Shown piece by piece: positions 27,009-36,994 of a stretch of 64,000 nt of DNA. The stretch lies in the NCBI RefSeq assembly GCF_902459465.1, contig NC_047069.1:20088001-20152000 (forward strand), read 5' to 3'. The translations under genes and the position numbers were made by a program. The stretch's first letter is position 1. The number at the start of each line of letters is the position of its first letter. Under the pieces are notes generated by a model. The model made no database searches, was not told the origin of the DNA, and saw only the letters and a program-made list of their open reading frames with translations. This DNA comes from Asterias rubens. Lineage: Eukaryota.

Positions 27009-27361
27009 TTAAAACAAGTAATGATATCCAAACAGTGATATGATAACACCGTACTTAAACGAAATTGATATTAAAAATGCATGTTTCATGCCCGCATAAA
27101 TGTAAAATTATCTCTTTGCCAGGGTCGCGGAAGGTCAAGAATGGTTGCTTTGTTTCGAGGTTCGTTCGATCATACAAAAAAACAGTCATAGGTATAATAT
27201 GAATGGTGATGATGTCACCAATAACAAGTAGATCCCACTGTGTATGGGGGATTGGCCATTGATTAGTCTTTGTGATTGCAGCTGCCGACCCTGGGAGTAA
27301 ACCGGTCGGCGTAGATTCGTCCTTATTATGTGAGAAAAGAAACGGGTTCGAACCGTCTTAA

Positions 27362-27739
27362 AGACATTGGACACCTTTGGTTATCGCCAAAGACCAGTGT
27401 TCTCACAGCCTACTTGGTGTATCCCAACTTATGCATAACATAAGAAATCTGTGAACATTTTGGCTCATTTGGTTGACGTTGCGAAATAATATTGAAAGAA
27501 AAAACACCCTTGTTGCTAAGATTTGTGTGTTTTTAGATGAATAATAAAAGGCTCAGCTCTAAGTCTTCTAATATTTGAGTGAAACATTACCTCATCCTCT
27601 AAAACTACTTTACTTCAGAGGGGGCCCTTTTTACAATGTACTTATATATAAGCTTTTAAAAAACTCTACATTGCTCGTTACCAATTCAGTTTTGATGCTA
27701 ACAATTATTTTGAGTAATCACCAATGGTGTCCATGTCCT
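27362..27739 (+). mobile_element. Kolobok-type MITE family A
   Basis: TTAA on both sides; agacattggacacc...ggtgtccatgtcct. Confidence 0.85.
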
Positions 27740-28548: not shown

Positions 28549-28589
28549 TTAAAGTGATTACTATTATGTATCTTTAATTATGAAACCAC

Positions 28590-29076
28590 CTACTATAGAG
28601 AGGGCTCGTTTTTTAACTCGAGTGAGATACAGTTCATCACTTGATGAACTGTATTTCTCTCGAGTTAAAAAACGAGCACTCTCTATAGTAGATGACCAGT
28701 TTCACCCAGCACATTCCCTCTTTCAGCCCATGCGGTCTAAGAATCGTTTTCGTTCAATTAAATCTGGATCCAACCGTACTTTGCAGAGTTTTTATCCCAC
28801 AGCTGTTCGTGTTCTAAATGACAGGTTTTAATCATGAATGTCTATTTTTGATTTTAATTCTTCCTTCGTACTATTTTTATCTTTCGTATTTCGCCTGTAT
28901 ATTGTAATACTTTTCAGAGTTGTTTATATTATATTTCCATGTATTTTTGTAAATGGTTAATTGTTAGTGTAATTTGTATACAACATAATATTTTTAGACA
29001 CGCAAAACCAAAACGAATTTCACTGTATTAATATTTTTATTTTTTTTTACAGGTGACAATAAAACATTATTCTATT
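28590..29076 (+). mobile_element. Rex1/Babar-clade LINE 3' end with 5' fold-back
   Basis: SLDELYFSRVKKRALSIVDDQFHPAHSLF...SFYPTAVRVLN resembles the Rex1 C-terminus; tail gacaataaaacattattctatt. Confidence 0.75.
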
Positions 29077-29583
29077 TTATATAACACCCAAGCAGATCCT
29101 TGCCATTTGATTGGAGGATTGTCCGTCACGTGATAGCAAATAAAAGTACCATTGCACGCTGAGTCACTCACCGTGCTTTTTCGTTCCATCCGAAAAGTAC
29201 CATTGCACGCTGGCACGCTGCCAGCGTGCAATGGTACTTTTCGGATGGAACGAAAAAGCTGAGTAAAACATCACTGCGTGCGCGTGTCTTTGGTAACGCA
29301 GCAGGTGTTACTGCAAGAAGGCATAGTAAAATTCGGCTTCTACAGTTGAAATTGTTTGTTTTGAAAGTTGTATCTTTCAATCAAAATTACAAAGTTCTAC
29401 TTGGATGTTATATAAAACAAATAATGAATGTTTTTCATTCGTGCAATGGTGCGAATATGTTCATTCGTTGAAAGCTGGAATGTTCCATTCAACTCGGCTC
29501 CGCCTCGTTGAATAGAACATTCCATCTTTCAACTCATGAACATATTCGCACCATTGCACTCATAAACATTCATTATGTGTATA
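29077..29583. mobile_element. Non-coding element with A..A'B..B' ends (Crypton-like, uncertain)
   Basis: See findings; long 3' palindrome centred on ctcggctccgcctcg. Confidence 0.7.
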
Positions 29584-29757
29584 CTATTCTATTCTATTCT
29601 AAGAGCTGCTGCAAGTGGTGGTGATACGTCTCTTTAAATCACGCTAAAATGCAGCGTTGATCATGTAGTCAGCTGTTCAATTCAGTATGATTTGTCCACA
29701 ATATGCACGTTATACAATAAATATAAGGGGCGACATGTTCAGGGGCGACATTGCAAT

Positions 29758-29907
29758 AGACCTTTTCGCAAATACTGGGGCGCGCGCGTAAAGCTTGGAA
29801 TTAGGTGCATTGTGGTCTAGCTGGTATCCAAATTTGATCCATATCTATCCCACAATGCACCTCATTCCACAATCTGCGCTTGCGCATTGGTATTTGCGAT
29901 AAGGTCT
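29758..29907. mobile_element. 150-bp MITE with AT target duplication (ISL2EU-like)
   Basis: TIR agaccttttcgcaaatac / gtatttgcgataaggtct (17/18); sits inside a ggggcgac array (about 29726-29980). Confidence 0.7.
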
Positions 29908-30139
29908 ATGGGCGTCATTGTCAGGGGCGCCATTGCAATGGGCGACTTTGTTGGGGCGAGCTGGCTAGGGGGCGAGATGACCACCCTTAAAAAAAGAAGC
30001 AAACATGCAGTCACTATAACGGTTATAAAGCAACACCAATAAATAAAGTAACAACTTGAGATTGACAATTTACATGCGTGTATAACGATAGGGCAACTGC
30101 TGCTACTGCTTCAAAGTGCCTCGCTCATAAACATTTCTT

Positions 30140-35758: not shown

Positions 35759-36264
35759 TTATAACACCCCTTGCAAGTATTTGCCTGCTCATTGGTTTAG
35801 AGCGCGTCACATGACATGTCTTAGTTTTGCTAGACGACGGCCGTGTGATAGTGCGTCGGTTTGCCATGCGCTAGTCCGAAGACTAGCACACGGCGTGCAG
35901 CACCCAGACGTCCGTTGCGTGTACCAGGATAATAAATTAATAGTCTGTAACCATTTCGGATTGCACGACACTACATGCAGCACAGTAAAAGTGTTTGCAA
36001 TCTGTATTCGCGTCGTCCGTGGATTGTAGCATTCAGGTCTGTAACTTAATAATAATAGTACAGTATTTACAAATGTTTGGGGTGTTATAAAACAAATATT
36101 GACTGCTTTTACTCGTACAATGGTTAAAAACTATTACTCCCTCGGTGATCCCCGTAGCGTTCTATTTTTCCTCGGCTTCGCCTCGGGAAAATAGAACGCT
36201 CCCGGGGATCACCTCGGGAGTCATAGTTTTAACCATAGCACTCGAAGCAGTCAATATTCGTATA
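35759..36264. mobile_element. Non-coding element with A..A'B..B' ends (Crypton-like, uncertain)
   Basis: ttataacacccc / ggggtgttataa-AACAAA-tattgactgct / agcagtcaata; palindrome centred on ctcggcttcgcctcg. Confidence 0.7.
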
Positions 36265-36576
36265 CTGTCACATCCATCATCACAGCTGCACTACCTTTCC
36301 TTTGACAATTTTAAACAATCCCCTTTTTTATGAGAAAGTGCAATTATATAGGGCTCTAAAGTATAGGGTAGGATTTCTTCAGGTTGCAATTCAGCGCGCC
36401 TTTTTGTCAATTGCCTGCATTTATTATTCACGCGTGATCTCCCGCATTAACAAAATCCAACAATCGATAGCCTACCTGTTAATGAACTGAGTGTCGACTG
36501 TCGAGTATAAGTTATAAGGAACATTACATAATTTACTGTTTTGCAAAATTATTGCTGGCGGTGAATATTTTTTTAA

Positions 36577-36994
36577 AGACACTGGACACCTTTGGAAATT
36601 TTCAAAGACCAGTCTTCTCACTTGGTGTATATCAACATATGCTATGCACAAAATAACAAACTTGTGAAATTTTGAATTCAATTGGTCGTCGAAGTTGCAA
36701 GATAATAATGGAAGAAAAAAAAACTTGTCACACAAAGTTGTGTGCTTTTAGATGCTTGATTTCGAGACCTTAAAATAAAGTTTGGGGGTCTCGAAATCAA
36801 ATTCTGAGGTCTCGCTCGAAATCAAATTCAAATATTTGGGTGGAAAATTATCTCGAAAATTACGTTACTTCAGAGGGAGCCGTTTTTCACAATGTGTTAT
36901 ACTATCACAGCTCTTCATTGTTTATTACCAAGAACGTTTTAATTCTAACAATTATTTTGTGAATTAAATTACCAATTTATAGTGTCCAGAGACT
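36577..36994 (+). mobile_element. Kolobok-type MITE family A
   Basis: TTAA+agacactggacacc; ends agtgtccagagact. Confidence 0.85.

What the first reader, a model, noticed from the sequence alone, without database searches (positions are those of the whole stretch)
29077..29583. Element whose internal site is complementary to both of its ends (copy 1)
Seen: left end A ttatataacaccca (29077-29090); internal A' tggatgttatataa (29402-29415), then AACAAA, then B taatgaatgttt (from 29422); right end B' aaacattcatta (29564-29575) followed by tgtgtata. B..B' is a long palindrome around ctcggctccgcctcg, and TATA occurs at both boundaries. As a single strand it folds into two hairpins that place the termini side by side across a 6-nt bridge, and the joined ends would recreate an arm-spacer-arm site. 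Established: DIRS1 uses an internal complementary region to circularise, Cryptons have short terminal direct repeats, and tyrosine recombinase sites are two arms around a 6-8-bp spacer. Inference: this is a non-autonomous element mobilised through a self-splinted circle. Crypton versus Helentron-type assignment is unresolved.
Basis: partly seen in the sequence, partly recalled or inferred. Interest (0 to 1): 0.75.

Follow-up and report, generated by a model that had tools for sequence, protein, structure and literature searches.

The report
Hairpin-ended Helentron-type transposon copy

Summary
Its 5' end (TATATAACACCC) pairs with an internal site at 29401-29414. A 164-nt hairpin (29417-29580) follows two bases later and closes four bases before the 3' end (ATAC).

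A second, diverged copy lies at 35760-36265. Twelve relatives came from animal-derived metagenome contigs, and all show the same plan. Three classes of 5' arm each match their own internal arm, and the hairpin base shows compensatory changes.

The flanks of copy 1 rebuild an in-phase (TATTC)n microsatellite. So the element went in between two T's without a target duplication.

A short terminal inverted repeat with a subterminal 3' copy, a stem-loop right after it and T^T insertion define Helitron2/Helentron elements and their non-coding derivatives (HINE/DINE-1).

- The Crypton/tyrosine-recombinase reading is not supported.
- The "AACAAA bridge" is mostly part of the hairpin stem.
- The "self-splint" geometry is real, but it follows from the known architecture. 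Its role is unproven.
- The autonomous partner was not found here.
- The scan had already reached the same verdict for copy 2 (s1-150658).

Verdict: an ordinary kind of element and a new family member. Its distinguishing feature is a hairpin about ten times the usual length.

The parts
29068..29077 (+). Left flank: two microsatellite units, TATTC TATTT, ending in host T29077 (5' half of the T^T target)
   Evidence: It is in phase with the (TATTC)n that resumes at 29585.
29078..29584 (+). Copy 1 of the element, 507 nt, non-coding
   Evidence: Alignment with L006 and L008 starts and stops at these limits. Internal ORFs have no Pfam hit. No Rfam family matches.
29078..29091 (+). 5' terminal inverted repeat (A), TATATAACACCCAA, 0 nt from the 5' end
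   Evidence: 13/14 Watson-Crick pairs with 29401-29414. Imperfect complementarity runs on to about 29108 (I6).
29142..29212 (+). Central direct repeat: identical 20-nt cores at 29142-29161 and 29193-29212, 51-nt period. It carries the motif ACCATTGCACG, which is also in the terminal hairpin
   Evidence: D5, D2, I15, I16. Also present in L006 and L008.
29175..29259 (+). Perfect inverted duplication (41-nt arms, 3-nt loop) specific to this copy
   Evidence: I5. Its second arm is absent from L006 and L008.
29401..29414 (+). Subterminal 3' inverted repeat (A'), TTGGATGTTATATA, 170 nt from the 3' end
29415..29416 (+). AA linker, the only unpaired bases between the two stems
29417..29580 (+). 3' terminal hairpin, 164 nt. 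Base stem ACAAA+B (29417-29433) pairs with B'+TGTGT (29564-29580). Conserved apex CTCGGCTCCGCCTCG at 29493-29507
   Evidence: MFE -63.9 kcal/mol, z = -19.7. 21 consensus pairs, 6 with double changes.
29581..29584 (+). 3' overhang ATAC, the last four bases of the element (consensus tail TTTGTATAC)
29585..29601 (+). Right flank: host T29585 and the rest of the (TATTC)n microsatellite
35760..36265 (+). Copy 2, a sister subfamily with the same plan: 5' TATAACACCCC, A' at 36079-36089, hairpin, tail TTCGTATAC, host T on both sides

Best explanation
Copy 1 is a non-autonomous Helitron2/Helentron-type rolling-circle transposon (a HINE, the class that includes Drosophila DINE-1). It inserted between two T's of a (TATTC)n microsatellite.

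Inferred mechanism:
1. A Rep-helicase supplied in trans by an autonomous Helentron nicks the + strand at T|TATA and unwinds 5'->3'.
2. As the single strand emerges, the subterminal repeat A' pairs with the 5' end. The long palindrome that follows snaps into a hairpin.
3. Together these mark the end of the element and bring the 3' cleavage site (ATAC|T) next to the Rep-bound 5' end.
4. Strand transfer closes a single-stranded circle, which is then inserted at another T^T.

Shown here: the anatomy, its conservation and covariation across families, the exact limits, and the T^T target without duplication.
Inferred: the enzyme, the order of steps and the role of the pairing.
For: Architecture:
- The 5' repeat is 0 nt from the end. 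Its partner is subterminal and is followed after 2 nt by a stem-loop. Copy 2 has the same plan.
- This is the published definition of Helitron2/HLE2/HINE ends.

Relatives:
- Twelve relatives on animal-derived metagenome contigs carry the 3' hairpin and, where the contig end is intact, the TTTGTATAC tail. Neither feature was part of the search pattern.
- The flanks of those contigs encode animal domains.

Covariation:
- Three classes of 5' arm each match their own A' at 11-13 of 14 positions. The most distant class (L007) matches foreign A' arms at only 5-8; between the two closer subfamilies the values are 7-12.
- Hairpin base: 94% of cells paired against 85% in shuffles. Covariation score 0.254 against 0.099 (0 of 500 shuffles reach it) and at most 0.06 when the partners are slid.
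- All 11 hairpins fold with z between -3.7 and -19.7.

Limits and target:
- The alignment with L006 and L008 breaks exactly at 29078 and 29584.
- The flanks rejoin as TATTC TATTT|TATTC TATTC TATTC, in phase.
- The 5' flank ends in T in 7 of 10 copies. The 3' flank starts with T in all 9 scorable copies.

Other:
- No coding capacity.
- Helentron proteins are published for echinoderms, including a sea star.
Against: - No autonomous partner with these ends was found, so Rep-helicase mobilisation is inferred from end structure alone.
- The 3' repeat lies 170 nt from the end, against 20-60 nt in published families. The stem-loop is about ten times longer.
- A 5' hairpin, present in many Helitron2 families, is not clear here.
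- Only one empty site could be reconstructed, and only by microsatellite phase.
- The relatives were retrieved with a pattern covering A'-end/AAACAAA/B. Conservation of that core among them is therefore by construction.
Confidence: 0.85

Rival explanations
1. A non-autonomous element moved by a tyrosine recombinase (Crypton- or DIRS-like). The joined ends would form an arm-spacer-arm site, templated by the internal complementary site.
For: The internal site is nearly the exact reverse complement of the joined ends. This formally resembles the internal complementary region of DIRS1.
Against: - The arms A' and B are not inverted copies of each other.
- The 'spacer' pairs with the 3' tail.
- The outer ends are neither inverted nor direct repeats.
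- Insertion is T^T, in phase, without duplication.
- There is no reverse transcriptase or recombinase nearby.
- Every end feature already has a Helitron2 counterpart.
Confidence: 0.03
2. Two independent palindromic MITEs, one with A/A' ends and one with B/B' ends, that happen to lie side by side.
For: Each half has its own inverted repeat (I6 and I2). TA-rich junctions are reminiscent of TA target sites.
Against: - The junction is identical in copies 1 and 2, although the rest is only 54% identical.
- In all 12 relatives the hairpin starts at the same distance from A'.
- 5' arms found upstream match their own A'.
- Neither half occurs alone in the window.
- The flanks show no TA duplication around either half.
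Confidence: 0.04
3. A member of an undescribed single-strand (HUH-type or other) transposon group whose ends converge on the Helitron2 layout, but whose partner is not a Helentron Rep-helicase.
For: The partner is unknown. The hairpin length and the 4-nt overhang lie outside published Helentron ranges.
Against: - All testable defining features of Helitron2 ends are met.
- Helentron proteins exist in echinoderms and, according to unchecked scan notes, in this genome.
- Replitrons, the other eukaryotic Rep transposons, have direct terminal repeats. In the paper read they are reported only from plants, algae and protists.
Confidence: 0.08

Closest known systems
HINE / DINE-1 (non-autonomous Helentrons; Thomas, Vadnagara and Pritham 2014, PMC4067079)
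   Same: - Non-coding and high in copy number.
- 12-15-nt subterminal inverted repeats, with the 5' copy at the very end.
- Palindrome after the 3' copy.
- Central repeats.
- TT target without duplication.
   Different: - Published palindromes are 5-10 bp and lie 8-35 nt from the 3' end, with the 3' repeat 38-60 nt from the end.
- Here the stem has about 70 pairs and closes 4 nt from the end, and the 3' repeat is 170 nt from the end.
Helitron2 / HLE2 (Bao and Jurka 2013, PMC3627910; HELIANO 2024, PMC11417382)
   Same: - Asymmetric terminal inverted repeats, with the 3' one immediately upstream of the terminal hairpin.
- The 5' end starts with T.
- Compensatory changes keep the repeats paired.
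- Pairing of the repeats has been proposed to set the replication endpoint.
   Different: - A 5' hairpin involving the 5' repeat is not evident.
- No autonomous copy is linked yet.
Canonical Helitron (HLE1, e.g. Helraiser)
   Same: Rolling-circle logic, a 3' hairpin as stop signal and a circular intermediate with joined ends (PMC4778049, PMC5876387; listed but not opened, so this rests on their titles and abstracts and on established knowledge).
   Different: The HLE1 features (5' TC, 3' CTRR, A^T target, no terminal inverted repeat) are absent here. This element has 5' TATA, 3' ATAC and a T^T target.
DIRS1 internal complementary region
   Same: One internal site is complementary to both termini. 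It could hold them together on a single strand.
   Different: DIRS elements are 4-6-kb retroelements with long inverted terminal repeats, reverse transcriptase and a tyrosine recombinase. None of these is present here (established knowledge; not tested beyond the end structure).
IS200/IS605 and IS91 (bacterial HUH transposons)
   Same: Single-strand transposition, subterminal hairpins, no target duplication and a short sequence-specific target.
   Different: These are bacterial elements. The enzymes are single-domain Y1, or Y2 without a fused helicase. No homology was tested.

Membership tests
Helitron2/Helentron (HLE2) and its HINE derivatives | [quoted passage not shown] | tested here: met
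   13/14 pairs; the 5' copy is at 0 nt. The 3' copy is 170 nt from the end, beyond the published 20-60 nt.
Helitron2/Helentron (HLE2) and its HINE derivatives | [quoted passage not shown] | tested here: met
   The hairpin begins 2 nt after A'. z = -19.7. It is present in all 11 modules tested.
Helitron2/Helentron (HLE2) and its HINE derivatives | Insertion between T and T without target-site duplication | tested here: met
   The flanks rebuild an in-phase (TATTC)n. The 5' flank ends in T in 7/10 copies and the 3' flank starts with T in 9/9. There is only one reconstructed empty site.
Helitron2/Helentron (HLE2) and its HINE derivatives | Compensatory changes that keep the terminal repeats and the hairpin paired across related families | tested here: met
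   Three A/A' classes. Six hairpin pairs have double changes, and the covariation score is 0.254 against 0.099.
Helitron2/Helentron (HLE2) and its HINE derivatives | 5' hairpin or short inverted repeat involving the 5' terminal repeat (many but not all families) | tested here: inconclusive
   Only a weak 5+3-bp stem lies 20-45 nt from the 5' end in the fold. It is not conserved in copy 2.
Helitron2/Helentron (HLE2) and its HINE derivatives | Autonomous partner with the same termini that encodes Rep-helicase (plus an AP endonuclease in Helentrons) | not testable with these tools
   There is no such ORF in the window. No query protein was available. The only support is literature and unchecked scan notes.
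Canonical Helitron (HLE1) | 5' TC, 3' CTRR and an A^T target | tested here: not met
   5' TATA, 3' ATAC and a T^T target.
Crypton / tyrosine-recombinase site | Core site made of two inverted recombinase-binding arms around a 6-8-bp crossover spacer | tested here: not met
   A' and the reverse complement of B share no similarity. The spacer bases pair with the 3' tail.
DIRS-like retroelement derivative | Inverted terminal repeats plus an internal complementary region; reverse transcriptase and tyrosine recombinase genes | tested here: not met
   The outer ends are not inverted copies of each other beyond TATA. There are no such genes.
TA-target MITE (Tc1/mariner-derived) or foldback element | Inverted repeats at the two outermost ends and a duplicated target | tested here: not met
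   The outermost ends do not pair with each other. No duplication is seen. The microsatellite phase is kept only if nothing is duplicated.

The most novel reading that the evidence does not exclude
In this family the hairpin closes only 4 nt from the 3' end and starts 2 nt after A'. The internal site could therefore act as a built-in splint. On the extruded single strand it would hold the 5' and 3' cleavage sites in one nicked duplex with a small AA/ATAC loop. End recognition, termination and circle closure by the Rep protein would then be structure-guided. The unpaired AA might even read the TT target. If so, this would be a compact, testable substrate for the still unreconstituted Helitron2/Helentron reaction.
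Probability: 0.25. Interest if true: 0.6.

Novelty: new member of a known kind. Interest (0 to 1): 0.3.

Why it matters
The finding settles a puzzling-looking structure as a known class of transposon. It gives exact limits, a target and diagnostic end motifs for a sea-star Helentron-derived family, which is useful for repeat annotation.

The long hairpin and the abutting termini make this family a convenient natural substrate for asking how Helitron2-type Rep proteins recognise and join their ends. No Helitron2/Helentron reconstitution turned up in the literature searches run here.

Tried and rejected
No read-based copy number, polymorphic empty site or circle junction could be sought, and read laying was therefore unusable.
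- The look-up of encoding contigs with two nearby ORFs found nothing, so no orthologous empty site was obtained.
- The viral-contig scan found nothing.
- The prokaryote-genome scan gave three chance hits without a hairpin. These serve as a control.
- Two of the 14 metagenome hits (L002, L004) are chance matches inside microbial genes.
- The scan's own index returned nothing by sequence, which means nothing according to the operators.
- Partner search: there is no Rep-helicase ORF in the window, and no referenced query protein was available. Typing one from memory or from OCR'd supplements was rejected as unreliable.
- The 1985 Tsp paper on sea-urchin DINE-1-like elements is not held.
- No paper contains the family's end motifs.
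- Pfam did not confirm that the left flank is a LINE. I therefore describe it only as a microsatellite.
- The 5' ends of L003, L009, L011 and L014 were not found within the contigs.
- Replitron membership was considered and rejected.

Full report
**Observation**

- A (29077-29090) and A' (29402-29415) are 13/14 complementary.
- AACAAA follows A'.
- B starts at 29422, and B' (29564-29575) is its perfect complement. B' is followed by TGTGTATA.

The repeat finder reports the A arms as a 34-nt, 82% inverted repeat. It reports B..B' as part of a 65-nt-arm, 86% palindrome with a 3-nt centre.

Folded as single-stranded DNA, the stretch gives exactly two stems. The energy is -157 kcal/mol against -57 +/- 5 for dinucleotide shuffles, z = -20.

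A second element at 35760-36265 has the same plan and folds with z = -10. The two copies are only about 54% identical overall. They still share four segments:
- the 5' TATAACACCC;
- the segment from the end of A' through AAACAAATA into the hairpin;
- the hairpin apex CTCGGCTYCGCCTCG, found twice against 0.01 expected;
- the 3' GTATAC.

**Relatives**

One scan of metagenome contigs used the 24-nt core shared by the two copies. It gave 14 contigs.
- Two (L002, L004) are chance hits inside microbial genes.
- The other twelve carry a long palindrome right after the core. Where the end is intact they also carry the tail TTTGTATAC.
- Their flanks encode animal domains, a fibrinogen C-terminal domain and a SCAP-type propeller. 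They are therefore animal host DNA within metagenomes.
- The same pattern in 596 Gb of prokaryote genomes gave three hits without any palindrome.
- Viral contigs gave none.

One caveat applies. Conservation of the core itself among these contigs is by construction. The hairpin, the tail, B' and the 5' ends are independent of the search pattern.

**Limits and target**

L006 and L008 belong to copy 1's subfamily. The three-way alignment starts at TATATAAC and stops at GTATAC, with unrelated flanks on both sides.

For copy 1 this gives 29078-29584. Its flanks read ...AACAT TATTC TATTT | TATTC TATTC TATTC TAAG.
- The 5-nt phase of the microsatellite is kept only if T29077 and T29585 are both host bases and nothing was duplicated or lost.
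- That is a T^T insertion without target-site duplication.

Across copies, the base before the element is T in 7 of 10. The base after it is T in all 9 that can be scored.

**Covariation**

Three classes of 5' arm occur:
- TATATAACACCC in copy 1, L006 and L008;
- TATAACACCCC in copy 2, L005 and L013, and in degraded form in L001 and L010;
- TATATACCGATT in L007 and L012.

Each class pairs with its own A' at 11-13 of 14 positions. The most distant class (L007) pairs with foreign A' arms at only 5-8. Between the two closer subfamilies the cross values are 7-12.

At the base of the hairpin, the three positions where B differs between subfamilies are all compensated in B'.
- RNAalifold on eleven 3' modules predicts 21 pairs, six of them with double changes.
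- On that structure 94.4% of cells are paired against 84.9% in shuffles.
- The covariation score is 0.254 against 0.099 (0 of 500 shuffles reach it). It is at most 0.06 when partners are slid by 1-3 columns.
- Relatedness of the copies inflates such numbers, but the slid controls keep relatedness.
- Each of the eleven hairpins folds as one long stem, with z between -3.7 and -19.7.

**A correction to the geometry**

The 'six-base bridge' is not a free spacer.
- In seven of eleven copies ACAAA pairs perfectly with TTTGT of the 3' tail. Copy 1 has TGTGT and copy 2 has TTCGT, one mismatch each.
- What stays unpaired is AA between the stems and ATAC at the 3' end.

I joined the ends in silico. The internal site pairs with this junction as one almost continuous duplex with a small loop at the junction:

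| Junction paired with the internal site | Energy (kcal/mol) |
|---|---|
| own subfamily | -19 to -30 |
| other subfamily | -8 to -16 |
| shuffled | about -6.4 +/- 1.6 |

**What it is**

The literature defines Helitron2/HLE2 elements (Helentrons and their non-coding HINE/DINE-1 derivatives) by these features:
- short inverted repeats, with the 5' one at the very end;
- the 3' one subterminal and immediately upstream of a terminal stem-loop;
- a 5' T;
- TT target sites without duplication.

Bao and Jurka also reported compensatory changes. They proposed that pairing of the two repeats sets the end of rolling-circle synthesis.

All features testable here are met.
- Central repeats, another HINE trait, are present at 29142-29212.
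- The element has no coding capacity and no Rfam match.
- Helentron proteins are published for echinoderms, including the sea star Patiria miniata. The sea-urchin Tsp family is listed as DINE-1-like.
- Unchecked notes of this scan also mention Helentron polyproteins elsewhere in this genome.
- A follow-up of copy 2 reached the same classification (s1-150658).

**What differs**

In published families the 3' repeat lies 20-60 nt from the end. The palindrome is 5-10 bp and lies 8-35 nt from the end. Here the 3' repeat is 170 nt from the end. The stem has about 70 pairs and closes 4 nt from the end. A 5' hairpin is not evident.

**Rivals**

- Tyrosine recombinase (Crypton or DIRS-like). This fails on several counts. 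The two arms of the internal site are not inverted copies of each other. The 'spacer' is stem. The outer ends are neither inverted nor direct repeats. Insertion is T^T without duplication.
- Two adjacent MITEs. The junction is constant across diverged families, and solo halves are absent from the window.
- Replitrons. They have direct terminal repeats, and the paper read reports them only from plants, algae and protists.
- Partner of another kind. The partner was not seen, so a small probability remains that it is not a Rep-helicase.

**Mechanism (inferred)**

1. Rep nicks at T|TATA.
2. The helicase unwinds 5'->3'.
3. A' captures the 5' repeat and the palindrome folds.
4. The composite structure stops the enzyme and presents ATAC|T for the second cleavage.
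5. Strand transfer closes a single-stranded circle that integrates at T^T.

A very long hairpin would make a strong stop signal. This fits the sharp 3' limits seen in the alignments.

**What could not be done**

No read-based census, polymorphic empty site or junction search was possible.
- Exact-protein look-ups for nearby ORFs were blank.
- No referenced Rep-helicase query was available for a partner search.

**Verdict**

This is a real mobile element of a known kind and a new family member. Its notable trait is a hypertrophied terminal hairpin.

Noticed in passing
window 29175-29259: A perfect 41-nt-arm palindrome lies inside copy 1. Its second arm is missing from the sister copies L006 and L008. 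It therefore looks like a recent inverted duplication (a fold-back or template switch) of part of the central repeat.
   Followed up: partly
window 29148, 29199, 29225, 29440, 29550: The motif ACCATTGCACG or its complement occurs five times in copy 1, in the central repeats and on both arms of the terminal hairpin. Copy 2 has a variant at 36113 and 36231. It may be a repeated protein-binding site.
   Followed up: no
window 29728-29960: Just right of the element lies a 65-81-nt-arm imperfect palindrome (29756-29909). It is bracketed by direct GGGGCGAC-rich repeats (29728-29757 and 29910-29954). It may be another foldback-type repeat.
   Followed up: no
window 28587-28694: A 53-nt-arm, 92% palindrome lies 380 bp left of the element. 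Another first-reader note (s1-151048) takes it for a fold-back at a LINE truncation. Pfam gave no significant hit for the adjacent 83-aa ORF.
   Followed up: partly
window 17757-17837 and 24117-24190: Two more long palindromes: one with 35-nt arms at 100% and an 11-nt loop, and one with 35-nt arms at 89%. Neither has the A'/AAACAAA context.
   Followed up: no
window 27358-27712 and 36573-36959: Another dispersed repeat, about 73% identical, lies near both element copies.
   Followed up: no
L003, L007, L009, L011, L012, L014 (contigs JAAUXV01...): A second metagenome project holds families with other A' arms and other hairpin interiors. They keep the same hairpin base and the same TTTGTATAC tail, so the end module is shared across several families and perhaps several host species.
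   Followed up: partly
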